A stretch of DNA of 64,000 nt from Guillardia theta CCMP2712. Taxonomy: Eukaryota; Protista; Cryptophyta. The notes under the pieces were generated by a model that saw only the letters and a program-made list of their open reading frames with translations, had not been told where the DNA came from and searched no databases. Each line of letters starts with the position of its first letter. Position 1 is the first letter of the stretch. The translations under genes were made by a program, and so were the position numbers. The stretch covers positions 1,133,474 to 1,197,473 of the forward strand of contig NW_005434667.1 of the NCBI RefSeq assembly GCF_000315625.1, in the 5' to 3' direction. This document shows, one piece after another, positions 32,928 through 45,371 of this stretch.

Positions 32928-33454
32928 GTACTGATCTTTAACTTAACTTTGAGTAAAGGCCGCGCCTGGGTCGACCCGGGCCGCCGCCGCTGTAGGCTGT
33001 CAACACAGTCTATCCGAGGCCCCCGCTCCCGGGAGTCCGGGCCGCCGCCGCGGCTGAGTCACTACTAGGCTACCCGGTACGGAAGGCTCCGAGTCGGTGT
33101 CAACGGTCTACAGTGTGCATAGTACAAGTCTAACAAACTTGTAGCACTGTGACTCAGTAGTGAGTCGGAGGTGCGGCTCTTTAGCGGCTAGTCACGGCGG
33201 GTCACCGGCAGGCGCACTGGCCGGGGCCCGTGGGCCGGGGCCGGCGGCACCGTGGCACTGTGACGGGCTTAACTTTGAGTAAAGAAAACGGGGCGCTTGA
33301 AGCGGCCCGGCAGCCTTTTTATCAAGTTGAGTGAAATATCAAGTAACTTTTAGTAGTCACCAGGGTCGGACCGTCCGATGGGACCTCAGCCGCAAGCATT
33401 ATGGCATGCAGGGACACAGGACTCTTTACTCAAAGTTAAGTTAAAGATCAGTAC
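32928..33454. mobile_element. Putative MITE-like element bounded by perfect 31-bp inverted repeats
   Basis: GTACTGATCTTTAACTTAACTTTGAGTAAAG (32928-32958) and its exact reverse complement (33424-33454) flank a GC-rich non-coding interior with a partial third copy at 33268-33284. No transposase is present. Confidence 0.55.
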
Positions 33455-34059
33455 TATTGACTTTTTAAAACTCATTATATCACTCTATTAAGACCCTTGT
33501 TGAGTGAAAATAGTGTAGAGCTAGTCCAAAAAGGCCTCAGGCTCATGTCTCTTCGTGGTACGTGCTCGAACAGTTGGGTTTGAATTTTTACAAAAAGATT
33601 AGTTTTCAGATATTTTGCTGACCAACGTCACGAGGTCTCGCTTGTAAAGATGACCGTTTGGAGGTCTAACTTGACTACCCCACCTGGTAAAGCAATGACC
33701 TCTCTGTCATGACCCCTACTTTATGCTTTTTTCCACCTACCCTATGATAAATGCTGTGTACCTTTGGATCCACTTTACCACCCCACAGAAGAGTATCTGT
33801 CTTTACCAACGCCTTTGCGCGCAATGCTAACCAACAATGCCGGCCTCAAGCGGTCAGGCACGAAAGAGTTAGCCATTAACTCAAGGACGGCAGAGCTTGA
33901 CCATATGTGATTAGTGATAGAACCAAGCACAGTCATTGACTGGCAGGAACCGCAAGGCATCTGAGTCTTGTACTTGGTACAAGGTCAAAGTTATCGCGGT
34001 AACTGCTCTAAAGCTCGTATCGACCCTCGTCTTGTTTCTTGGACATTGTTATCAACGTC

Positions 34060-37000
34060 ATGTCTCCTTTGAACAATCAAGAGGAAAGAATTCAGATCAA
34101 TGGCAACGGTCACACAGATATCAATGACGATGCAACGATGAAGAAGATCACCTCGTTGAATAGCCTTCGGTCTGCCAGCGTCACCTCTCCCGTCCACGGC
34201 TTGTTGGAGGACGAGAAAGACAACGATCAGAGAAGTGTCCATAGTCCTCTGTTTTCGAGAATTCTTATCGGGGATACAAATCAAAAGAACTCTCTGAATC
34301 GAACTTCCTCTAGCAAAAGCGCGAAGGCAGCAGAAAAAGTATTGAAGGGGTTTGGTATTTTTTCCCGTCCGGAGAAGAAGCGACACACTATTCTGGTTAC
34401 CCCTGAAAGAAAGCTCCAGAAATTGAAAAGCTCTCAGATCAAGAGGAAAATCCGCAAAGTTCACTTCCGTCTCCCAAAATCCAAGAACGACAAGAGGCTC
34501 CATATCCTAGAGCCTGGGTCAGCGTTCTTAGAGAAATGGTTGAGGTTTATGATGCTTCCTTTGGCATATGAGCTGTGGGCGTTCCCGTTCAGACTTGCGT
34601 TCTGTGATCCAAGATCGTCAGAAATTCTGATCTGTGATCTTGTCTGCGATATCATCTTCTTCTTCGACGCCATGGTTCGGCTCAACACCGCCATCCCGGC
34701 GGAAACGTATCCAGGTCAAACAGAGGCTATAACAGAATGGTCAGGAGTTGCAGAAATGTACGTCAGACACTCTCTCCTCCCCGATCTCCTCCCTATCGTC
34801 ATGTACTGGGTAAGTAACGGCTGATTGTGTTGCAAATCAGTGAAATCTTAACGTTTAGGTGACAACGCTGTCGTTGCGCTCTTTCTCAGGGAGCCTGGTC
34901 TGGATCTGGTGGGCGTTCATGATCCCAAGGCTTGTCACGAGAGTCTCTCGTCTCGCGTTCTTCTTTCGGTCTATGGAAACGAACCTCGAGCTCAACGTTC
35001 GAAACCTTCAGGCGGTCAAGATCTGCCTTGTCATTCTCCTGTCCTCCCACTGGGTGGGTTGCCTATACTACTTTCTGGCAAGAGTGCAATCGTTCAAGGA
35101 GACAACATGGGTACATTGCACTCTCATCGTTTTTTCTCCATGTCGCTGAAATGCCTCGGCAGGTGCGGGACTTTGAACATCTTCTTCCGCTCTACAAGTT
35201 TGACCACAGCACGGTTGCAACGAACTACCTGCTATGCATGTAATGCTTCTTGTCTTTTCCTTTTATCTGTCTCATCTCTTGTTCAAGGTACAAAGGATTC
35301 AATGCACTCTCAAACCTTGCATACGACCTTGGCCTGCCGTCGAACATTGTGGAGATGTTGTACTCGCTGATGGTCATGACAATACAGGTTGACATGCCGC
35401 CATGTATGTTACCATGGTTAAGAGCATGTTGCAGATCTATCTCAGCGCTTTGATTCTCGGAACTCTCCTAAACTACCTCGTGCGCAAGAACCCGACGGAG
35501 GAGGCGCACAAGCAGCACATCGAGCAAGTGAAGCAGTTCATGGAGAGTAAGAGCTTGCCCGTGTCCCTGCAGGAGAGGGTGCTGGGCTACTTCGAGTTCC
35601 AGTACCAGAAGAATGTCAACAGCTCTCTTTCTACTTCCATGGATCTCCCGCGATCTCTTCGCATCAAAGTTGCCAACGCCAACTACCACGATCTCATCGT
35701 CAAGTGCGCCAACAGGGGAAAACCCCTCAACGGCTGTAGCTCGCAGTTCTTCAACGTAAGTGCACCTTGTATTCCTTGATTGAGCTGAGCTCGTGCTGGG
35801 TCTTGCAGGCGCTCATGACGAGGCTCCAAGTGATGCACGTCATGTCAAGTGAGGAGATAGTGAAGAGAGACGAGTGAGTCTTGTTTCCTGCTACCTTCCA
35901 GCTGAGGCTTGCTCCTCCTCCAGGATCCCTCGCGAGCTCTACTTTGTGAGTGAAGGGGCCGCGCTCATCATTGATGAGAAGGAGAGGACGATCGGAGTGA
36001 TCCGAAGCGACGTGCCCGACATCGCTCCCATCATCGGAGAGGTGGAGGGCTTCTCGACTTGATGCCGCTGACTTTTCTTCAGGTTCCCTTCTTCCTCGGC
36101 ATCAACTACGTGCATACCATCAAAGCAAAGGCGGACGAGGATCTTGAGTTGCTCGTCCTGTCCAAGGAGGACAGCTCGGAGCTGTTCAGTAGCTATCCGG
36201 AAGAGCATCAGATCATCTGCGAGAACCTCCTCCGAAAGTTCGACCTGGACGCCAACGGGGACTCGATCAAGGGAGCGCAGGAGGACCTCAGTGACGTGGC
36301 CAAGTTAGCAACCAAGACCAAGATCATTCAGTCCATCAAGAGCCGAGCCGAGCGGCTCTTCTTCTCCCTCTCGCACTCAGCAAACTCGGGTGATGTGGAG
36401 ACTGTCCTGCAGCTAATCCGGCAGGGCGCAGACATCAACAAGTCAAACTACGACAAAAGGACCGTGCTGCACATGGCGTGTGCGGAAGGAAACTATCGGA
36501 TGGTTGAGATCCTCCTCAACAATGGAGCTGAGAAAGACCTCAAGGATAGATGGGGTCAGACGCCTCTCCAGACGGCCATCAACCACAAGCAGCTCATGAT
36601 CGTTGGGCTGTTGACGCAGTGGAAGGCGAGTCTCGGCTTCGAGAACGCGGCGTCAGCGCTGTGCGAGGCATCGGGAGGAGGAGACCTGGCGCAGGTGCGG
36701 AGGCTGATTGAGAACGGGGTCAACGCCAACCTAGGAGACTACGACAGGAGGACAGCTCTGCATGTGGCCAGCGCTGAGGGTCATGACAAGGTGGTGGAGT
36801 ACCTGCTGAGCAAGAAGGCGGATCCCAACGCCGCTGACCGCTGGGGAGGAACGCCGCTGCAGGACGCGCTCTTGAACGGGCACGCGCTGGTGGCAACGCT
36901 GCTCAAGGCGAAGGGAGGGTCGATGCCCAAGGACGTGGGGAGCGAGGAGGTGTGCTCAGCTGCGGGGCTCGGAGACGTGAAGAGGCTGCGGTTGATGCAT

Positions 37001-39582
37001 GACTACGGTCAGCCGACGGACGTTGGGGACTACGACTTTCGCTTCCCCCGTGAGCCGTTGCTGACGTCACCGTGACCATCTGACCTCTCTTGCAGTCCAT
37101 CTTGCAGCTGCTGAAGCCAAGGTCCTGGCTGTCTCCTTCCTCCTCGGCGTCAGCGCAGACCCAAACTGCACCGATCGATGGGGAGGGACGCCAATGGACG
37201 ACACGCTGCGAGGAGGAACGTTGTATCACATGTACTGCGCGAAGCTCATCCAAGGTACTGCGTCTGCTCGCTCCTTCTCTCTGCTCCAAGAGTTTCTCAT
37301 GCCTCCTGTGTTGACATGCTGTGCTCAGGGTGGGGGGGAGAGCTGGGGCTCTACAAGGACACGGAGGAGGGGAGGAGGTTCATGGAGAGGCTGGACTCCA
37401 TCTCGATCAAACAAGTTCGACTGCTGATCAAGTCGCTGATCGACCAAGGGCTGGACAAGACGTCTCCCAAGCACCTCACGGTTGAGGAGCTCAACCTCTA
37501 CCTCAAGGCGAGCGGCGAGATGATGCCTACTGTCCTCCAGCTGTCGTCCAACATCAACAGCGTGACTGGCGACATCCAAGTCTTCCGCGACCTCCTACAC
37601 ACGCAAGTTCTCTTCCTCAAGAGCAAGATTCAGATGATGTTTGATGCTGCTCCTGCCGTCCGAACTCCCTCCTCGTCTCCCGGAGTCAAGTCAGTGTGGA
37701 TGGAGAAGATTCATGCAACGATGCAGAGCATGCAGCTCATAGGCGTGCAGGACCTGGAGAGCATGGTGATCGACGAGCTCGACCTGGATGGCGACATCGA
37801 CTCCGAGACCGAGTACGCCCTCTACGAGGAGCTGGACGAGCTGCTGGAAGCGCAGGAGCGAGCTGAGGCGCAGGGAGTGCACTGGGAGAAGCTGGCGGTC
37901 TCGTCGTTCCGTCAAGCGGCGATGCGGCTGACCGACATCGAGCTGGCGTACGAGCTCTTGACGCGGGTCGCGTGCTCGGCGAAGTCAGACGTGGTGTCCT
38001 ACTTCAGCTCGGACCCCTACATGAGCAGCCAAGACCTCGGTATGGTGCTCTCTATCCTCCGGGTGGAGACGGGGAACATCGACGTGGACGACATGCTGTT
38101 TGAAGTCCAGCAGCACCTCGAGCTGATGGGCAAAAGAACCTTCTCCGACGGCGAGTCCAGCCATCCCGAGGAGGAGCTGACCGGCGCCAACCTGTCGGAG
38201 ATCTTTGCGGGCAGCCCCAAGTTCAGGAAGTGTCTGCTGGGGATGCAGGTAGACTCAACGCTCTGCTCGCTCATGAGGTCGGAGTTGAAGCTGCACTTCA
38301 CTGAGGAGGAGGTGCTGGAGCTGCTCAAGGATCACGGGAAGTTCAACGCCAAGGCAGGAGACACGATCTTTGACGCCTCCAAGCCGGATGGGTCCAGCTG
38401 GTACTTCGTTGTCTCCGGGGACGTCAAGTGCGCACAGGAGGACGGAGGAGCGAACTCAGCTGGGTTCGGAACCAACGGAGGAGGAGGGTCGTTCTTCGGA
38501 GGGATGTACTACCTGACCGGAATCCAGCCAGCTCAAAGTATCGTCGCCCACAGTCAGTCAAAGATTATCAAGCTCAGCAGGAAGAAGCTGGAGGAGCAGA
38601 TGCGAGGGAGGAAAGAGGAGAGCATCCGAGCTCTGGCAAGGCTGATGTTGGAGGCTACGGACGTGAAGAGTCTTGAGGAAGGAGGAGCGAGGAAGGCGAG
38701 CACGAACAACGACTCCTTCCAGAACTCCTTCCAGACCATGCTCAAGAACTTCTCCTTCCGGTCATTCAAGATGTCCACCGGGACGAGCTTGTCGAACTCG
38801 AGGGTAGTTCCCTTTCCTACTCACGAGGCCGGGCAAGGGGGAAAGGGAATAGGCGACAAGCTGTCGAGCGCCTTTGAACTGGAGGAGGAGGAGGATGATG
38901 TACTGGACATCACCATCACAGAGGAAGACCGTCGCAAGCTCAAGGAGGGTTTCACGCTGGTGAGCGAGTGCTGGAAGACTCTCTCCCTTGGCTCCTCGTC
39001 CGTTGCGCACGGGCAGGTGAGGAGCATCAAGACGCTGGTGGGGGAGAGCGGAGCAGAGCTGTTCGAAGGCTTGTTTGCAGACGTGCTGCAGAACGACGCG
39101 ATCGACATCACCGTGAACCGGTTCTGGGCCTGCTGGATCGAATTCCTACATGCCGGAGTGACGGAGACCGACGAATCGCTGAGGCTGAGATCACACAAGG
39201 TGTCCTTCAACCAGGAGGAAAAGAAGGAGAAAGCCGAGCTAGAGGTGGTCGACATGGAGGACGAGGAGCAGGAGGGCATCTTCGAAGCTCTGCACGCGAG
39301 GTTTGCTCCAGTGAGGAGTCTGAGGAAGAGGTTCGCGGAGTATGAGATGAGCATGTGGGAGAGGGAGTACGGCAGGATCGCTGGAGGGCTGAATGAGCCG
39401 CTGAGTAGCGACAAGGTGGAGCAGCTGCTGCGGAATGTGTTCTACGACCATCCGTTCAAGATCACGAGAAAGAACTGCAGGGAGCTTTACGAGTTTGTGG
39501 GCAAGCGATACAGCAGCGATACCAGGATCTTGTGGTCTGACCTCAACAAGGTACCCTGTCGTCTCCTGCTCCTGCTCCTGCC

Positions 39583-39623
<41 letters not shown>

Positions 39624-39624
39624 C

Positions 39625-39681
<57 letters not shown>

Positions 39682-42600
39682 CACCTTCTTCCTCCTCATC
39701 CTCATCCTCATCCTCGTCCTCCTACTCTTTGTTCTCGTCCTATGTCCCTCGTTTCTTATCCGTGATCGCTCTCTCTTTCCCTCTCGTCATCATCAGCCGC
39801 ACTCTCTTGGTCTGTCCCCCTCCTCGTCTTATGATCATCCGCTGCCTTCCTCTCGTCCCCCCTCCCCCCCCGGCCCATCTCTCCCTTTTAGGCCTTGCTC
39901 CTCTTTCCATTCTCCTGCCTCCATTGCTGACTGGAGTACAGGCTCTGCGAGATCAGCAGGCAGGCATCGGCGTGGAGGAGACGGGCTTATTCGTCGGCCG
40001 GGCGCTCAATCCCAACAGCATCGTCTACGACTACTGGCGCCTACTCCTCAAGTTCGTCGCCGTCTATGACTTTGTCGCTGTTCCCATCCGCATCGCGTTC
40101 AAGCCCTGGGGCAGCATGCTGAGTCCGGTCGCGCTGGGCACGGACCTGACAGCCGACTCAGTCCTCTTCCTCCACCTGTTCCTGGAGCTCAACACAGCCT
40201 TCAAGAACGAGCGATCCCTGTGGGTCACTCAACGGTACAAGATCTTCCGTCACGCGGACCTCTTTGTCATCTTCTCTGCTCTCCCTCTCGACTGGTTCGC
40301 CTACCTCTGCGGGGCCTCGCTCGAAGCCTGCGACTGGCTGCGGCTGAACAAGCTCTTCCTCCTGCGAGGAAAGATCTGGGAGATGCGAGGGGGGCCGAGC
40401 TTGAACCTTTCCAACACAACCACGATGATCTTGAGGATGGCGAAACTGATGGCAATGACGCTGCACGTCTCAGCTTGCATCTGGTTCTTCATCGGCAGAA
40501 GTTACGAATCCTGGTTCCCCAACAGAGCCATTAGCTGGTTCTATGTCAGCCCCTCCTACAGCAACATCACCTTCGATCACAACCAGAACTTCGCGATGGT
40601 CAACAGGAGGACGGGGGAGGAGTACCTCCTCTCCCTCTACTGGGTAGCCGCCACCCTCACTGTCAACGGCGCCGTCGGCGATATGATCCCGCAGAACGTG
40701 ATCGAGATCTTCTTTACTATCGTTCTCATGGCGCTCAACATGACGCTGTACCGCTGGGTGATCGGAGAAGTCTCGACGATCATCATGAGCGCAGACGATG
40801 ACGTGGTGAAGAGGAGAGAGCAGATGGAGAAGATAAAGATCTTCATCTCGGGAGGAAAGTTCTCCTCGAAGCTCCAGGAAGAGATCAAGTCTCACTTCTG
40901 GGCGGTTCAGAACGGCTCCACCCTGGATCAGACGGTGATCTTCAAGGGGCTCAACCATGGGCTACAGGTGGAAGTCGCTCGCTTTATCTCCCGCAAGCAC
41001 CTCGACAACGTGGAGCTGTTCAAGGGATGCAGCGAGTTCCTTCTGGACGGCGTGTGCGTACTGCTGAGGGAGGTGTCGTTCATGCCGGAGGAAGTGTTGT
41101 TTCATGTGCTTGAAGGTAAGATGAGATGATAGCGTTGGCGATACAGTGTGGCCTCCTCCTACTCGTTTCCTGCTCATTTTCTCTTCCTCCGTTTCTCCTC
41201 TTCTCCACCTTCTTTCTTCACCTGCTCTTCTCTTCCTCTACTCCGTTCCCTCCTCCGCTTCCTTCCATCTCCTCCACTGTCACTGACTTGTTCTTCTAGT
41301 CTCCAAGGCCATGTTCTTCGTTGTGAGCGGGGCAGTGGAGGAGGTACAGGAGAAGGATGAGGGAGAGACAGTGACTGCCGTCCGACGCACCAACCACTCG
41401 GTAGGAGGCCTTGCCTTCTTCTTCGGGCTGCGGCAGCTGGAAACAGCGAGGGCGTCCAAGGGAGGGGCAGTGTGCTTGCGGTTGGAGCGAGAGAGCTTTG
41501 TTGAGCTCCTCAAGACCCACCAGAGGGACGAGGATGTCATTGCACAGAACGCAATGCGGTCGTTCGAGGTGGTGAACAAGTCTAGGATGGGAGGCAGCAG
41601 CAAGCACTCGGGGTACTCGGGGATGTCAAGCCAGTCGAGCGGGTCGTCGAGGAAGAGGAAGAGGAAGGAGAGGTTCGACGAGGAGACAGCGTCCAAAAAG
41701 TCCGGGGGTAGCACCTCCAAGAAATCGTCCAACTCCAAGATGTCAGAGGAGAAGTCCACCACTGTCTCTACCAATCTTGAATCTGACAACTCGGTGAGCC
41801 TGCTGCCTGCTGTCTTCAGTCCTGTTGTCTTGCCTGCCCCCTTGCTAGAAAGTGCTGAATGTGATGATCGTGACGATGGTGATGAATTTTTCTTCCTCTC
41901 TCTTGTCCTCGTCTCTGCTCTGACTCTTCTTAGGACGATTCCTCGGAGCTCGTGGCTGGAGAAGGCACCAACGACAAAGTAGCGATGCTCAAGGTCCGGA
42001 GAAAGAACGAGAGGATCGTCCTGCTCCTCTCTCTCGCCGCGCATGGCGATGTCGATAAGGTCAGGAAGCTGCTCGCCAACGCCGAGGCCTCGGTCAACGA
42101 CGAGGACGGACTCAAACGCACAGCCCTGCACTTGGCGGCAAGCGAAGGGCACGGGGAGCTGGTGAAGGTTCTGCTCAAGATGAAAGCGGACGCGAACCTC
42201 AAGGACTCGTTTGACAACACGCCGCTCAACGACGCTGTTCGCATGAAACACGACAAGGTCGCCAAGCTCATCCGCGATGCTGTCCCAGGCATCCGCGTGC
42301 TGCTCCCTGGCAACCAGGCAGGCGTTCTCATGTGTCAGGCTGCGGCAGACGGCGACCAGGAGCAGATCAAGCGGCTGCTTGAGAATGGCGTTGGGATCGA
42401 CGAGAGCGACTACGACGGGAGAACGGTACTCCCCGCCCCTTCGCTAGCTCCTCTTCTTCTCCTGCTCCCCCTGTTCCTACCCCCGCGCTCGCTCTGTTCT
42501 GTTCGCTCCTTGACTCCCTAGCCTTATGTATTCTGCGCTCACTCGCTCACCGCAGGCACTACATCTTGCTTGCTGCGAGGGGCATGTCGACTTGGTTCAG

Positions 42601-43623
42601 TTTCTGCTCTCCTCAAAGGCGAACATCGCATGCCAGGATCGCTTCAAGGGGACGCCGCTGGAGGACGCGGTGCGGCACACGTTCGACATCAGGAACGCGG
42701 GCCACGTGCAGTCGATCCTTCGAGAGTTCGGGGCGAGTCTGGCAATGAAGAAGAGCGACTATGCCGCCAAGATCTGCTCGCTTGCAGCTCGGGGAGACCT
42801 GAGGATGATGCAGGTGCTGGTTGACAACGGGGTTGAGGTCGACATCGCCGACTATGACGGCCGTACCCCCCTCCACCTGGCGGCAGCCAACGGGAACACG
42901 TCGATCCTGGAGTACCTCATCCAGCAGGAGGGGGTGGTGGTCAACGCGACTGACCGGTTCGGCTACACCCCCCTCGACGACGCGCTGCGGCACAGCAAGA
43001 AGACGGCAGTCGCGATCCTGGAGGAGGTGGGCGGAAAGACGCACGAGGATCCGGCGCTGGTAGCCATCATGGAGGAGCATACAGCAAGGATGAAGAAGAG
43101 GAAGCGAGAAGAGACCATCCCCAAGATCGCCGAGCTAGTCAAGAACAGCCCGGAGAGTCATGCACTGCAGTGGACGGAAGAGGAGCTGCTTCCAAGGATG
43201 AAGGACGAGCTAAGGGCGGTGGAGGAGACGCTGCAGGAGATCGAGAGCCTCTGGAAGGAGACCGAGCTGAAGCTCAACTCGCAGATTCTGGACTTCTACT
43301 TGGTCTGTGTCGAGCTCAGCACGTCCATGGCTCCTCTGTCCAAGGACTGCAGGAAGAAGATGATAGCGATGAGGCGGCTGCTTGAGAGCGAGTACTCGGA
43401 GTCAGGCCCCATCTCCTGCAAGATGTGGATCTCCCTGTCGTCAAAGTTCCGGCGGGTGATCGGAGATATCATGCTGGACTTCAGGAACTACCTCCAGCTC
43501 CTCAGGATCGCTAAAGACCTCCTCAAGGAAGTCAGCAAGCAGCAGAAGAGAATGAAGTTCGTGACTGAGCAGAGCTCGCGCCGCGCTTCGTTGATTGCGG
43601 CAATGGAGGAAGGACCGGATTGA
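34060..43623 (+). CDS. Giant tandem CNBD/ankyrin (AKT/Shaker-like) cation channel with two 6TM-CNBD-ANK units and a central CNBD-like domain; about 14 exons, about 2,750 aa
   Basis: Unit 1: S1 WLRFMMLPLAYELWAFPFRLAF, S5 HWVGCLYYFLA, P-loop ALSNLAYDLGLP, C-linker VKQFMESKSLPVSLQERV, CNBD, ankyrins DYDRRTALHVA. Unit 2: WRLLLKFVAVYDFVAVPIRIAF, HVSACIWFFIG, SLYWVAATLTVNGAVGDMIP, CNBD, ankyrins DYDGRTPLHLAA. The linking introns (about 37050-37094, about 37255-37328, and 39551-39941) are phase-compatible. Confidence 0.88.
39565..39680 (+). repeat. (CCTGCT)n microsatellite in intron 39551-39941
   Basis: Directly visible; it produces the false poly-Leu and Cys-Ser runs in the ORF track. Confidence 0.92.
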
Positions 43624-43904
43624 AGATCCAAGGAGGATGTACTTTTTTCAACTGTGGGACGACTATGTATTTTTTTCAACTGTGAAAACGACTATGTACA
43701 AGGATGAAAGATAGGCATAGTATTGAAGGAAATGGAATGAACAAGAATGTAAGGTAGACATAATAATGAAGGGAATTGAACAATCAAGTATGCAAGAGAG
43801 GCGTGATGAGGGAAATGGAATGAATGAACGAGTATGAAGGAAGGGAAGGGACGAACAGGTATAATAGCGTGCACGAGAGGAGGAGGGAAATGTCAGTCAA
43901 AACG

Positions 43905-45371
43905 TCAGTCATGCGGCTGAAACAACATCTTGGATAGCGAAAGTTCGTCCATGGCCCTTGCGATTCCCCGCATTCGGTTCCTCCTCGCCTGTATGTTCTC
44001 CTCCATTGCTCGCTCCTCCTTCTCCTCCTCCGGCTCTCCCACGTACAGGAAGCCTTCCGGCGGCTCCCAGTACTGGGTCAGGTCTGCCATGCACATTCAG
44101 CAACACCTTCAGCTGAACTCCAGCAGTCACGTGTTGGCAGGTAGGGTCCGATGGGCTCCCGTTTCGGCCCCAGCAGCATCTGGTTGGGCGGCCGCTTGCC
44201 CCAAAGCTTGAACATGCTCGCGAGTCTGAGCGCCTCCTCCCCCCACCAGGACGGGAAGTGCTGCACCCTCGCCTGCGCAGCTGCGGTCAAGCTCAGCTAC
44301 CCCCAAGCTCACCCACCTGAATTTCGACCTGTGTCCTCTCTCCTGCAAGCTCGTCAAGTGCTGGAGCTAGCTGGCGGGCGCAAGTCACCTGTACCATTCC
44401 CGAAGTCTCGATAGCTCGGGAGGGTCAACGTGATGTCCTTGTGGAGCTCCTGCCAGCAGCAGCATCGTTAGCGTCGTCATCTACCTCGCCAGCCTCGTCA
44501 CGACCTGATCTGTCAAGAAGGACAAGAGAGTCTCGGCGAAGTCGATGGACGTCAAGTTCCAGGCGTTGAACTTAGAGGCGTCAAATGTCTTCTTCTGCTC
44601 CTCTAGGAATGTTCTGATCGCTTCCTCGCTCCTGTTGGTTCGCCCATACGGTACCGTGTGCAGCCTCGTACCGAAAGGGCAGCAGCGCGCGTCGTAACTG
44701 ATGACGCCATTGTAAGCGCAGTACGTCCACTCAGTGCCGTGGAGGAAGATGCTGAGCTGCCACATCCCGAACTCCATCGGGTCGCTCGCGTCCTCGTCTG
44801 ACGCCAGGAACCTTGCTACTCCCCTGAGGTCGTAGTAGTTCACATAGACGCGAGGAGCTTCGGGATGCTGCTGAAGCTCAGCCTCCTCAATCGCCTCCAC
44901 CATGATCTCATCTGCTTTCGTCTGAATTGCATGGCAGATAAGCTCCTTGTCCGATGAGACGCCATTGCTGATGTTGCCGCGAACGGCACACACCCGAATT
45001 TTCTTGTACCTTGTCTCCAGTTGCTCATCCAGCGTATGATATGCTGAGGGATCTGCATCGGCATCGAATCCCAGGAGATCGTACAGTTCTCTCTTTCTGT
45101 CTTCGTCCTCTGCGCACTCTACCGACCCTGATGCTTCTCCTTCCTCCTCCGGATCGTGAAAGCCTCGGGCATCACCGACAGCTCCTCCTCTCAACTGCCA
45201 GCGCAGCCCGACGAGAGGAGGAGGACTTGAACTTGCCGCCATGCACATCACTGATGCACTTCGAAGCTCTTCAACGTGCCGCTGGCTCGCCATCGCGCTC
45301 ATCATCCACCATAGCAACGGCATGATCCGCCCCCGCCCTCGACCCGCCATCACTTTGTCATCGTCCCCCAT
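43905..45371 (-). CDS. PPPDE/DeSI-family protein lacking the catalytic His/Cys dyad (pseudo-isopeptidase)
   Basis: VYVNYYDLRGVAR...GMWQLSIFLHGTEWTY...GRT...FNAWNLTSIDFAETLLSFLT aligns to the DESI1 pattern VYDLS.G.AR...GIWHTSIVVH..E...[20 protein letters not shown]. Confidence 0.72.

What the first reader, a model, noticed from the sequence alone, without database searches (positions are those of the whole stretch)
34060..43623. Covalent tandem of two AKT-like channel units, both with non-canonical selectivity filters
Seen: phase-compatible splicing joins two full 6TM-C-linker-CNBD-ankyrin units into one ~2,750-aa ORF (e.g. SDLNK|ALRDQQ across intron 39551-39941). Where K+ channels have TTVGYGD, unit 1 has ALSNLAYDLG and unit 2 has TLTVNGAVGD. 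Established: plant AKT/Shaker channels are single-unit tetramers with GYG. Concatenated CNBD channels are known mainly as the four-repeat CNGK, which lack ankyrins and keep a K+-type filter. Inference: this is a two-repeat channel that would work as a dimer with an asymmetric, probably non-K+-selective pore, parallel to two-pore channels but derived from the CNBD-ankyrin lineage.
Basis: partly seen in the sequence, partly recalled or inferred. Interest (0 to 1): 0.85.

Follow-up and report, generated by a model that had tools for sequence, protein, structure and literature searches.

The report
Two-unit CNBD-ankyrin ion channel gene
One 2,743-residue gene of a cryptophyte alga (by all signs Guillardia theta) joins two complete channel units of the CNBD-ankyrin type, both without the potassium-filter signature; it is one of eight such genes in the genome and an undescribed variant of the two-repeat CNBD channels known from other protists.

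Summary
Window 34060-43623 (+) holds one 14-exon gene with 13 GT-AG introns, an 8,232-nt CDS and 2,743 aa. It encodes 6TM-C-linker-CNBD-ankyrin, a 740-aa linker, then a second 6TM-C-linker-CNBD-ankyrin. The linker holds a third CNBD fold and two tentative EF-hand-like lobes.

The linker-to-unit-2 splice appears in a spliced contig of a public run. The unit-1-to-linker junction aligns without gaps to ten homologues. It lies inside an uninterrupted ORF in two paralogues, in a 3,020-aa MMETSP transcript ORF that maps entirely to a paralogous locus here, and in 2,440- and 2,511-codon metagenomic ORFs. The genome has eight such loci.

Each unit has its own conserved non-canonical filter: unit 1 is S-x-Φ-[G/A]-Y-[D/I/V]; unit 2 is mostly T-x-x-G-x-Φ-G-D, with one extra residue. 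Unit 2 is under purifying selection (48 synonymous against 7 non-synonymous codon changes). No CNBD has the phosphate-binding arginine.

Two-repeat tandem CNBD channels were described in dinoflagellates and oomycetes in 2020, though with TVGYG filters and no mention of ankyrin repeats or of cryptophyte tandems. The dimeric, asymmetric, non-K+-selective pore remains an inference.

The parts
34060..43623 (+). Whole coding region of the tandem channel gene: 14 exons, 13 GT-AG introns, 2,743 aa plus stop
   Evidence: spliced CDS of 8,232 nt with a single terminal stop. Exon borders were chosen by alignment to intron-free homologues and by reading the DNA.
34537..35476 (+). Unit 1 transmembrane core S1-S6 (aa 160-398), interrupted by introns 34814-34889, 35111-35162, 35240-35287 and 35388-35434
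   Evidence: Hydropathy peaks. Weak Pfam Ion_trans hit. The paralogous unit 1 aligns to SKOR from S1 to the CNBD at E 5.5e-23.
34901..34969 (+). Unit 1 S4 (WIWWAFMIPRLVTRVSRLAFFFR), with 4 Arg; the family pattern is PR..xR..R
   Evidence: alignment across the family; alignment of the paralogue's S4 to SKOR.
35304..35333 (+). Unit 1 selectivity-filter position: ALSNLAYDLG. N-L-A-Y-D stands where K+ channels have T-V-G-Y-G.
   Evidence: Close paralogues have LSTLGYD[IV]G; the C53-type clade has LSSIGYIPIVP.
35477..36196 (+). Unit 1 C-linker and CNBD (aa 399-590), with introns 35756-35808, 35874-35923 and 36042-36082. The phosphate-binding-cassette position reads GEVPFFLGINYVHTIKA, with no Arg.
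   Evidence: In one search the paralogue's CNBD aligns to the SthK CNBD, and the PBC Arg column is not Arg.
36344..37253 (+). Unit 1 ankyrin repeats (aa 640-927), with intron 37050-37095 inside a repeat (DYDFRFP|L|HLAAAEAK)
   Evidence: Pfam Ank_2 2.1e-30; DNA read.
37255..37328 (+). Intron 9 (74 nt, GTACTG..CTCAG). Its removal joins the last ankyrin repeat of unit 1 to the linker (..AKLIQ-G-WGGELGLYK..).
   Evidence: phase-compatible. In one search the spliced junction aligns without a gap to ten homologues. In one search the same junction lies inside an uninterrupted ORF in paralogues C53a and C53b.
37329..39550 (+). Exon 10: the 740-aa inter-unit linker, conserved in all paralogues
   Evidence: 117 relatives at E<=0.001. 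AF2 model with mean pLDDT 75.
38294..38671 (+). Third CNBD-like domain, inside the linker. The PBC position reads FGGMYYLTGIQPAQSIVA, with no Arg and no Glu.
   Evidence: Pfam cNMP_binding 5.5e-8. Foldseek matches to the MloK1 CNBD (TM 0.72, rmsd 3.1 A over 131 columns) and to HCN2 C-linker plus CNBD. phmmer against PDB found nothing.
38900..39544 (+). Two helix-loop-helix-pair lobes (EF-hand-like fold, no canonical Ca2+ loops) just before unit 2; tentative
   Evidence: AF2 pLDDT 81. VIA-align Z 5-6.3 to S100P, the TPC2 and AtTPC1 linker EF domains and calmodulin-type lobes. All Foldseek top hits are calmodulin or troponin C, but at E>=0.07. The nearest Atlas clusters are CNBD+EF-hand proteins. 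No member hits a Pfam EF-hand model.
39551..39941 (+). Intron 10 (391 nt, GT..AG), full of CTC/CCT-type microsatellite
   Evidence: A spliced 594-nt contig of run X1 skips it (table 8). In paralogue C135 the linker runs into unit 2 with no intron, in one 1,208-codon ORF.
39942..41115 (+). Exon 11: unit 2 S1-S6 (40026-40775) and C-linker
   Evidence: phmmer against PDB: SthK 6.5e-20, GORK 1.4e-16, hERG, SKOR, CNGA and HCN1. Hydropathy. 31 synonymous against 6 non-synonymous codon changes versus relative L019.
40335..40379 (+). Unit 2 S4 (WLRLNKLFLLRGKIW). Only one Arg and one Lys are conserved across the family.
40653..40682 (+). Unit 2 selectivity-filter position: TLTVNGAVGD, one residue longer than T-T-[VI]-G-Y-G-D
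   Evidence: HMMER places a gap in SthK: TLTTIG-YGD; family pattern T-x-[TS]-x-x-G-x-[VIY]-G-[DENKA] in nearly all compared sequences; two metagenomic sequences lack one of the two glycines.
40776..41526 (+). Unit 2 C-linker and CNBD, with intron 41116-41299. The PBC position reads GGLAFFFGLRQLETARA, with no Arg and no Glu.
   Evidence: Pfam cNMP_binding 6.8e-7. The best solved relative of this CNBD is the SKOR CNBHD.
41994..43026 (+). Unit 2 ankyrin repeats, with intron 42426-42555 (DYDGRT|ALHLACCEG). They follow a Ser/Lys-rich low-complexity stretch (41569-41966, holding intron 41794-41933).
   Evidence: Pfam Ank families; splice choice.
43027..43620 (+). C-terminal tail of about 200 aa after the ankyrins, with no recognised domain (no KHA)
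   Evidence: In one search, Pfam lists only ankyrin families for 42514-43620.

Best explanation
This is a single gene for a two-repeat ('tandem') channel subunit of the CNBD superfamily. The layout is unit 1 (6TM, C-linker, CNBD-like domain, ankyrin repeats), then a conserved 740-aa cytosolic linker, then unit 2 with the same layout as unit 1. The linker is helical at its start, then holds a third CNBD-like fold and two EF-hand-like lobes. The gene is one of eight paralogues in this genome, which is very probably Guillardia theta. Relatives occur in Hanusia phi and in marine metagenomes.

Shown here: the gene structure, part of the transcription and splicing, the family, the per-unit conservation of the odd filters, and purifying selection on unit 2.

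Inferred:
- Two polypeptides assemble so that four pore modules (1-2-1-2) line one pore, as in two-pore channels.
- The resulting filter is two-fold symmetric and lacks the four identical TVGYG strands needed for K+ selectivity. The pore probably conducts cations non-selectively, and the acidic residues (GY-D in unit 1, G-D in unit 2) may give it Ca2+ permeability.
- Unit 1, with the more charged S4, is the likelier voltage sensor. Unit 2 keeps only two conserved basic S4 residues.
- None of the three CNBD-like domains has the phosphate-binding Arg, so, as in plant Shaker CNBHDs, they probably act as structural or gating modules rather than cAMP/cGMP receptors.
For: One gene:
- A complete 2,743-codon ORF appears after removal of 13 GT-AG introns.
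- A spliced contig bridges 39548|39940.
- The ankyrin-to-linker junction created by intron 37255-37328 aligns without gaps to ten homologues.
- That junction lies inside an uninterrupted ORF in paralogues C53a and C53b, and the linker-to-unit-2 junction lies inside a 1,208-codon ORF in C135.
- MMETSP transcript P0123 (3,020 aa) is 100% identical over its first 1,064 aa to locus C53a of this genome. It maps colinearly over all 3,020 aa and contains both units.
- Hanusia phi transcripts P0152 and P0153 (2,763 and 2,812 aa) have the same layout.
- Single uninterrupted genomic ORFs of 2,440 and 2,511 codons in marine metagenomes cover the unit junctions.
- Eight of eight unit-1-type loci in the genome have a unit-2-type partner downstream on the same strand, the matched cores being about 4-5.5 kb apart.

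Functional, not decaying:
- Against a 94%-identical relative, the exons have no indels and show 48 synonymous against 7 non-synonymous codon changes, while the two larger introns are 84-90% identical with indels.
- The filter motifs are conserved separately in each unit.
- Unit 1 and unit 2 form separate clades (SH-aLRT 97 and 99) with mirrored subclades.

Channel nature: the best solved relatives are SKOR, GORK, KAT3, SthK, hERG, CNGA and HCN.

Assembly: a co-fold of the pore modules of paralogue P0154 (2+2 copies) scored ipSAE 0.38 against a best control of 0.00. The tool calls this weak support. Its mark was reached by 51 of 78 solved complexes and 2 of 108 mismatched pairs, but at 0.60 or under by only 5 of those 78 and by all 4 mismatches that passed. 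The runs agree in at least 85% of contacts, and the partner's pLDDT is at least 58.

CNBDs: the PBC Arg column is not Arg (and the sequence itself).
Against: - No read or contig covers the unit 1-to-linker junction of this particular gene. The raw RNA run gave only two reads. An internal promoter that also yields a unit-2-only transcript cannot be excluded.
- Nothing measures conduction, selectivity, stoichiometry or ligand binding.
- Selectivity cannot be read reliably from a filter sequence; PMC7576140 makes the same point for HCN against Kv.
- The window's unit 1 sits on a long branch (0.7) and alone has Ala for the first filter Gly. This copy may therefore behave differently from its paralogues.
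- The co-fold result is weak and could reflect general K-channel likeness.
- The EF-hand-like assignment rests on Z 5-6 and a language-model hit. No Pfam EF-hand model matches.
Confidence: 0.6

Rival explanations
1. These are two adjacent paralogous genes: a unit 1 gene ending near 37425 in the unspliced frame, and a gene starting near ATG 37383 that encodes the linker and unit 2. They only appear fused because an in-frame splice can be drawn.
For: No RNA evidence covers 37050-37330 in this gene. Left unspliced, the ankyrin frame stops at 37425-37427, and an ATG lies at 37383 in the linker frame. Some public gene calls for family members are unit-sized fragments.
Against: The two hypothetical genes would overlap, with no room for a terminator or promoter. 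The spliced junction is colinear and ungapped with ten homologues. The junction is continuous ORF in C53a and C53b, in transcripts of G. theta and Hanusia, and in metagenomic ORFs of 2,440-2,511 codons. Eight of eight loci keep the order.
Confidence: 0.03
2. The protein is intact and under selection, but its pore no longer conducts. It would serve as a membrane-anchored sensor or scaffold (voltage sensor, ankyrin platform, CNBD/EF-like modules), or as a regulatory partner of other channels.
For: Both filters depart strongly from every filter with a known conduction mechanism. The protein has large cytosolic interaction domains: about 20 ankyrin repeats and three CNBD-like folds.
Against: The P-helix, the filter length class and S6 are conserved per unit across deep paralogues and species. 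That would not be expected if the pore were irrelevant. Selection acts on the TM exon.
Confidence: 0.15
3. It is still an essentially K+-selective, Shaker/AKT-type channel. The unusual filters would fold into a K+-coordinating cage, as the variant second pore loops of K2P channels do.
For: Most unit 1 sequences keep G-Y, and nearly all unit 2 sequences keep two glycines and the following acidic residue. The best solved relatives are K+ channels.
Against: The second filter Gly is replaced in every unit 1, by D, I, V or L. Every unit 2 compared has one more residue in the filter than the canonical motif, between the two glycines where both are kept. From general knowledge, comparable changes in NaK and CNG channels abolish K+ selectivity.
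Confidence: 0.12

Closest known systems
[quoted passage not shown]
   Same: Two 6TM-CNBD repeats sit in one polypeptide. First and second repeats fall into separate clades that branch alike, pointing to co-evolution and specialisation of the repeats. CNBDs are partly degenerate in some members. All are known only from sequence.
   Different: Those channels have TVGYG-type filters and are predicted to be K+-permeable. The paper never mentions ankyrin repeats and describes no domain-bearing linker. It sampled Cryptophyta (Goniomonas) but reported tandems only in dinoflagellates, oomycetes and chlorarachniophytes. Whether the cryptophyte family shares an origin with them was not tested here.
Plant Shaker K+ channels with ankyrin domains (AKT1, SKOR, GORK)
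   Same: The domain order is the same in each unit: 6TM, C-linker, CNBD-homology domain without a cNMP-binding Arg, ankyrin repeats. SKOR is the best solved relative of unit 1 (E 5.5e-23) and of the unit 2 CNBD. GORK's tetramer reduces its symmetry from C4 to C2 (abstract of PMC12742848), an arrangement that a dimer of tandems would hard-wire.
   Different: Plant Shakers are single units that tetramerise. They carry TxGYGD and a C-terminal KHA domain, and they have no inter-unit linker. None of these hold here.
CNGK / tetraKCNG four-repeat channels
   Same: CNBD-channel repeats are concatenated in one polypeptide.
   Different: CNGK has four repeats, not two.
Two-pore channels (TPC1/TPC2)
   Same: The subunit has two 6TM repeats and dimerises to give four pore modules. 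The two repeats have unequal voltage sensors and filters, and an EF-hand domain sits in the inter-repeat linker (general knowledge). The linker lobe of this protein matches the TPC2 (327-408) and AtTPC1 (316-400) linker domains at Z 6.0 and 5.1.
   Different: I found no sequence relationship: TPCs do not appear among the solved-structure hits of either unit. TPCs lack C-linker, CNBD and ankyrin domains. The fold matches are weak.

Membership tests
Two-repeat tandem CNBD channels (architectural class of PMC7576140) | Two 6TM-CNBD repeats in one polypeptide | tested here: met
   for this gene; for paralogues and relatives.
Two-repeat tandem CNBD channels (architectural class of PMC7576140) | First and second repeats form separate, similarly branching clades | tested here: met
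   unit 1 clade SH-aLRT 97, unit 2 clade 99, with matching window-type and C53-type subclades. The root, on a long-branch metagenomic protein, is unsure.
Two-repeat tandem CNBD channels (architectural class of PMC7576140) | TVGYG or a close variant in both repeats | tested here: not met
   NLAYD in unit 1 and TVNGAVGD in unit 2.
Two-repeat tandem CNBD channels (architectural class of PMC7576140) | Common descent with the dinoflagellate and oomycete tandems | not tested
   Their sequences could not be obtained. The paper itself suggests several independent origins.
Plant Shaker / AKT-type K+ channels | 6TM, C-linker, CNBHD, ankyrin order, with similarity across S1 to the CNBD | tested here: met
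   (SKOR E 5.5e-23, aligned from S1 to the CNBD).
Plant Shaker / AKT-type K+ channels | TxGYGD selectivity filter | tested here: not met
   No alternative GYG exon in the locus.
Plant Shaker / AKT-type K+ channels | Single-unit subunit (tetramer of four polypeptides) | tested here: not met
   Two units in one ORF.
Plant Shaker / AKT-type K+ channels | C-terminal KHA domain | tested here: not met
   Pfam scan of 42514-43620 lists only ankyrin families.
CNGK / tetraKCNG | Four 6TM-CNBD repeats | tested here: not met
   Two TM units only.
Two-pore channels (TPC) | Sequence homology of the 6TM repeats to TPC | tested here: not met
   No TPC among the listed hits (best 60 of 75-76) of either unit.
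Two-pore channels (TPC) | EF-hand domain in the inter-repeat linker | tested here: inconclusive
   VIA-align Z 5-6.3 to EF-hand pairs, including the TPC linkers. Foldseek E>=0.07. No Pfam EF-hand hit in 23 family members.
Two-pore channels (TPC) | Dimer giving four pore modules | tested here: inconclusive
   score 0.38 against best control 0.00, which the tool calls weak support.
Cyclic-nucleotide-gated channels (functional CNBD) | Phosphate-binding cassette with the conserved Arg (and Gly-Glu) | tested here: not met
   Alignments to SthK and SKOR and direct reading. In the Arg column, unit 1 has Tyr, the linker CNBD Ala and unit 2 Gln. Actual binding cannot be tested with these tools.

The most novel reading that the evidence does not exclude
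Cryptophytes carry their own family of pseudo-heterotetrameric CNBD-ankyrin channels (eight genes in G. theta). In it the pore is built from two different, co-evolving filter types, neither of them GYG: unit 1 G-Y-[D/I/V] and unit 2 G-x-Φ-G-D. This would be a new selectivity-filter design and possibly a new ion preference. It would have arisen independently of TPCs and of the SAR tandem CNBD channels, with division of labour between a charged unit 1 voltage sensor, a nearly uncharged unit 2 sensor, and a CNBD/EF-hand-like module captured in the linker.
Probability: 0.35. Interest if true: 0.75.

Novelty: new variant of a known kind. Interest (0 to 1): 0.55.

Why it matters
Internal concatenation of channel subunits is how TPC, CaV and NaV channels arose. 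Each independent case shows which asymmetries evolution exploits once subunits are tied together.

In this family both tied units have abandoned the K+ filter, each in its own conserved way. They have also diverged in S4 charge, and each keeps a plant-Shaker-like CNBHD-ankyrin tail.

That makes the family a natural experiment on two-fold-symmetric filters, and it can be tested directly by expression and ion substitution. It also extends two-repeat CNBD channels beyond the SAR supergroup to cryptophytes.

G. theta is already a source of optogenetic channels, so its channel repertoire has practical interest too.

Tried and rejected
1. RNA evidence for the unit 1-to-linker junction. Read laying on 35300-41299 (6,000 letters) gave two reads from the raw RNA run X6 and three short contigs from X1. 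None covers 37050-37330.

2. Two-gene model. Rejected; see the rivals.

3. Alternative splicing that restores GYG. A six-frame scan of 33000-44500 found no G[YF]G in a pore context.

4. Rooted phylogeny with named single-unit channels. The word-indexed protein searches returned only family members and fragments. PDB sequences cannot be imported. The tree is therefore rooted only on a long-branch metagenomic multi-repeat protein, and internal duplication versus fusion stays open. By raw scores the two units are no closer to each other (about 150-240) than to that outgroup (195-256). Unit 1 is closer to P0176 and to a Cymbomonas protein.

5. Whether P0176 is truly single-unit. Its contig continues into more ankyrin coding and then ends, so this is undecided.

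6. The search for related loci in metagenome contigs. The single protein found nothing.

7. phmmer of the linker CNBD against PDB found nothing. The fold match and Pfam carry that assignment.

8. EF-hand by sequence. No Pfam EF-hand hit in any of 23 members, so I call the lobes EF-hand-like only.


Full report
**What is there**

The + strand between 34060 and 43623 carries stop-free segments that encode, in order: 6TM pieces, a CNBD, ankyrin repeats, a long open segment, a second 6TM block, a CNBD and more ankyrin repeats. I delimited the exons by reading the DNA. I also scored every GT/GC..AG pair against intron-free homologues.

The resulting model has 14 exons and 13 canonical GT-AG introns, ten of them 41-76 nt and three of 130, 184 and 391 nt. 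It translates into 2,743 residues with a single terminal stop. Hydropathy gives two sets of S1-S3, S5 and S6 with a P-helix each, at aa 160-398 and 1697-1946.

**Is it one gene?**

Three junctions matter.

1. Linker to unit 2. A 594-nt contig of public run X1 lies on 39275-39548 and continues at 39940-40259 without a mismatch. Such a contig can only come from spliced RNA. In paralogue C135 the same junction has no intron and sits inside a 1,208-codon ORF.

2. Unit 1 ankyrins to linker. Here two short introns (37050-37095 and 37255-37328) must be removed. Both are GT-AG and phase-compatible. They yield DYDFRFP-L-HLAAAEAK, a perfect ankyrin motif, and AKLIQ-G-WGGELGLYK.

   No read covers this junction in this gene. 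Even so, the spliced peptide aligns without any gap to ten homologues. In paralogues C53a and C53b the last ankyrin repeat and the linker lie in one uninterrupted ORF.

3. The whole protein. MMETSP transcript ORF P0123 (3,020 aa) is 100% identical over its first 1,064 residues to locus C53a of this same genome. It maps colinearly over its full length and contains unit 1, linker and unit 2. Hanusia phi transcripts of 2,763 and 2,812 aa have the same layout.

   In marine metagenomes a single 2,440-codon ORF holds both TM units (P0157). A 2,511-codon ORF runs from the unit 1 CNBD through the unit 2 ankyrins (P0008/P0118).

In the genome itself, every unit-1-type core has a unit-2-type core downstream on the same strand. 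The matched cores lie about 4-5.5 kb apart. There are eight such loci: C7 (this window), C85, C135, C115, C124 and three on C53. Four of them were mapped piece by piece.

A two-gene reading would need overlapping genes and is contradicted at every point. I put it at about 3%.

**Organism**

The assembly is 87.1 Mb in 669 contigs. A paralogue's transcript carries the UniRef name Guillardia theta and another is identical to the genome. The nearest named relatives are from Hanusia phi. The scan's own unchecked notes mention GtACR2 in this genome. I therefore take it to be G. theta.

**The filters**

HMMER aligns unit 2 to SthK as TLTVNGAVGD over TLTTIG-YGD. It aligns the intron-free unit 1 of C53a to SKOR as LSSIGYIPIVP over MATVGYGDIHAV. 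The window's unit 1 reads LSNLAYDLGLP at that place.

Across the family the deviations are not random:

- Unit 1 is always L-[SA]-x-Φ-[G/A]-Y-x. The second filter glycine is replaced by Asp in the window/C85/C135 clade and by Ile, Val or Leu in the C53/P0157 clade.
- Unit 2 is T-x-[TS]-x-x-G-x-[V/I/Y]-G-[D/E/N/K/A] in nearly all sequences, with one residue more than the canonical motif between the glycines. Two metagenomic sequences lack one of the two glycines.
- The window copy is the only one with Ala for the first glycine of unit 1, and its unit 1 sits on a long branch.
- No exon-like alternative with a GYG or GFG filter exists in the locus.

**Selection**

An ENA metagenome contig (L019) is 93.9% identical to 39655-42136. 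Its exons have no indels and are 95-98% identical. The two larger introns are 84-90% identical with indels. Changed codons are 48 synonymous against 7 non-synonymous. Unit 2, odd filter included, is therefore maintained by selection. The same contig supports the window's reading frame at the G-run at 40389, where one low-depth DNA contig lacks a G.

**Sensors and ligand domains**

The S4 of unit 1 keeps the P-R-x-x-x-R-x-x-R pattern plus further basic residues. The S4 of unit 2 keeps only one Arg and one Lys family-wide.

In all three CNBD-like domains the column of the phosphate-binding Arg holds another residue, and two of them also lack the Gly-Glu (and direct reading). The best solved relative of the unit 2 CNBD is the CNBHD of SKOR. 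From what is established for PBC mutants and for plant Shaker and KCNH CNBHDs, canonical cAMP/cGMP gating is unlikely. This is inference.

**The linker**

The 740-aa linker is a conserved block, not a spacer. There are 117 relatives at E<=0.001, and the long ones place it between ankyrins and a unit 2 core.

An AF2 model from 30 sequences (pLDDT 75) shows a helical N-part and a CNBD fold. Foldseek matches the fold to the MloK1 CNBD (TM 0.72, rmsd 3.1 A) and to HCN2 C-linker plus CNBD.

After a disordered stretch come two lobes of paired helix-loop-helices. Modelled alone (pLDDT 81), these lobes match EF-hand pairs at Z 5-6.3. The matches include S100P, calmodulin-type lobes and the inter-repeat EF domains of TPC2 and AtTPC1. 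All 50 Foldseek rows are calmodulin or troponin C, but at E>=0.07.

The nearest Atlas clusters by language-model features are small CNBD+EF-hand proteins, scoring 0.94 and 0.92. No family member hits a Pfam EF-hand model, and the loops lack the Ca2+-ligand pattern. I therefore call the lobes EF-hand-like and tentative.

**How it most likely works**

A polypeptide with two pore modules cannot close a pore alone. By analogy with TPCs and with every tetrameric 6TM channel, two copies should assemble into a four-module pore with alternating units. Heterodimers between the eight paralogues are also possible.

A co-fold of the S5-P-S6 modules of paralogue P0154, two copies each, scored 0.38 against 0.00 for the best of three controls. 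The tool rates this as weak support. Its mark was reached by 51 of 78 solved complexes and 2 of 108 mismatches, but scores of 0.60 or under came from only 5 of those 78 and from all 4 passing mismatches. Contacts agree at 85% or more and the partner's pLDDT is at least 58. It may merely reflect general channel likeness.

With two filter strands of one kind and two of another, none able to form the canonical carbonyl cage, strict K+ selectivity is unlikely. A non-selective or Ca2+-permeable cation pore, gated mainly through the unit 1 voltage sensor and modulated by the cytosolic CNBHD/ankyrin/EF-like assembly, is my best guess.

I put the gene structure at about 0.95 and the whole mechanistic package at about 0.6. 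A non-conducting sensor or scaffold (0.15) and retained K+ selectivity (0.12) remain open.

**Comparison with what is known**

Pozdnyakov et al. (2020, PMC7576140) reported two-repeat tandem CNBD channels in dinoflagellates and oomycetes, and tandem Kv-like channels in those groups and in a chlorarachniophyte. First and second repeats formed separate co-evolving clades, and the filters were 'TVGYG or close variants'. The text never mentions ankyrin repeats.

That survey sampled Cryptophyta (Goniomonas), but tandems were reported only in the three SAR groups. A phrase search for tandem CNBD channels found no other paper on such channels.

The architecture class is therefore known. What is new here:

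- the lineage (cryptophytes);
- an ankyrin block after each CNBD, a plant-Shaker-like unit design;
- the domain-bearing linker;
- loss of the K+ signature in both repeats in unit-specific, conserved ways.

The proteins already sit unannotated in UniProt and MMETSP as 'Cyclic nucleotide-binding domain-containing protein'.

The tree of unit cores shows that the tandem predates the paralogue radiation. For lack of named outgroups it cannot tell internal duplication from fusion.

**Verdict**

This is a new variant of a known kind, of solid interest to channel evolution and biophysics.

Noticed in passing
window 39551-39941: Intron 10 is largely CTC/CCT-type microsatellite. It translates as poly-Leu, poly-Pro-Ala or poly-Ser-Cys, depending on the frame. 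Read laying skipped 39556-39732 as repeat.
   Followed up: partly
window 40389-40395: This is a run of G inside exon 11. One low-depth DNA contig of run X2 lacks one G, which would shift the frame. The 94%-identical metagenome contig L019 has no gap in this exon, so the window's version is probably right and the X2 difference a homopolymer error.
   Followed up: yes
P0158 (Hanusia phi transcript), aa 591-619: The closest named relative carries a 29-aa in-frame insertion exactly where the window gene has intron 37255-37328. This may be a retained intron or an alternative donor in that transcript.
   Followed up: no
G000 contigs C53 (about 139.7-146.4 kb, 412.5-418.7 kb, 496.5-502.9 kb), C124 (190.5-196.9 kb), C115 (109.8-117.4 kb), C85 (69.4-75.9 kb), C135 (19.4-26.4 kb): These are seven further loci with unit 1 upstream of unit 2 on the same strand. 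Three lie on one contig, which suggests local duplication. The C53-type copies have far fewer introns than the window copy.
   Followed up: partly
L020 8166-9128 and 9530-17065 (ENA metagenome scaffold): In an uncultured relative the unit 1 TM part is called as a separate 320-aa ORF, 400 nt upstream of the 2,511-codon ORF that holds the rest. It is probably one gene split by an intron or by the gene caller.
   Followed up: no
L018 7269-10429 (Logan contig, protein P0176): This is an 837-aa 6TM-CNBD-ankyrin gene in a compact, intron-poor eukaryotic contig. It groups with unit 1. Ankyrin coding continues in another frame to the contig end, so the call may be truncated, and its single-unit status is unclear.
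   Followed up: partly
L017 (Cymbomonas tetramitiformis, protein P0177): A green-algal protein scores nearly as high against the unit 1 core as cryptophyte paralogues do (688 against 183 for unit 2). Within 8 kb downstream I found no linker or unit 2 match, but its introns are large.
   Followed up: partly
P0160 (ENA metagenome, 2,283 aa): This protein has four Ion_trans stretches, three cNMP_binding stretches and a weak C2 hit. It looks like a CNGK-type multi-repeat channel and was used only as a long-branch outgroup.
   Followed up: no
Channel concatenation may be recurrent in this organism.
   Followed up: no
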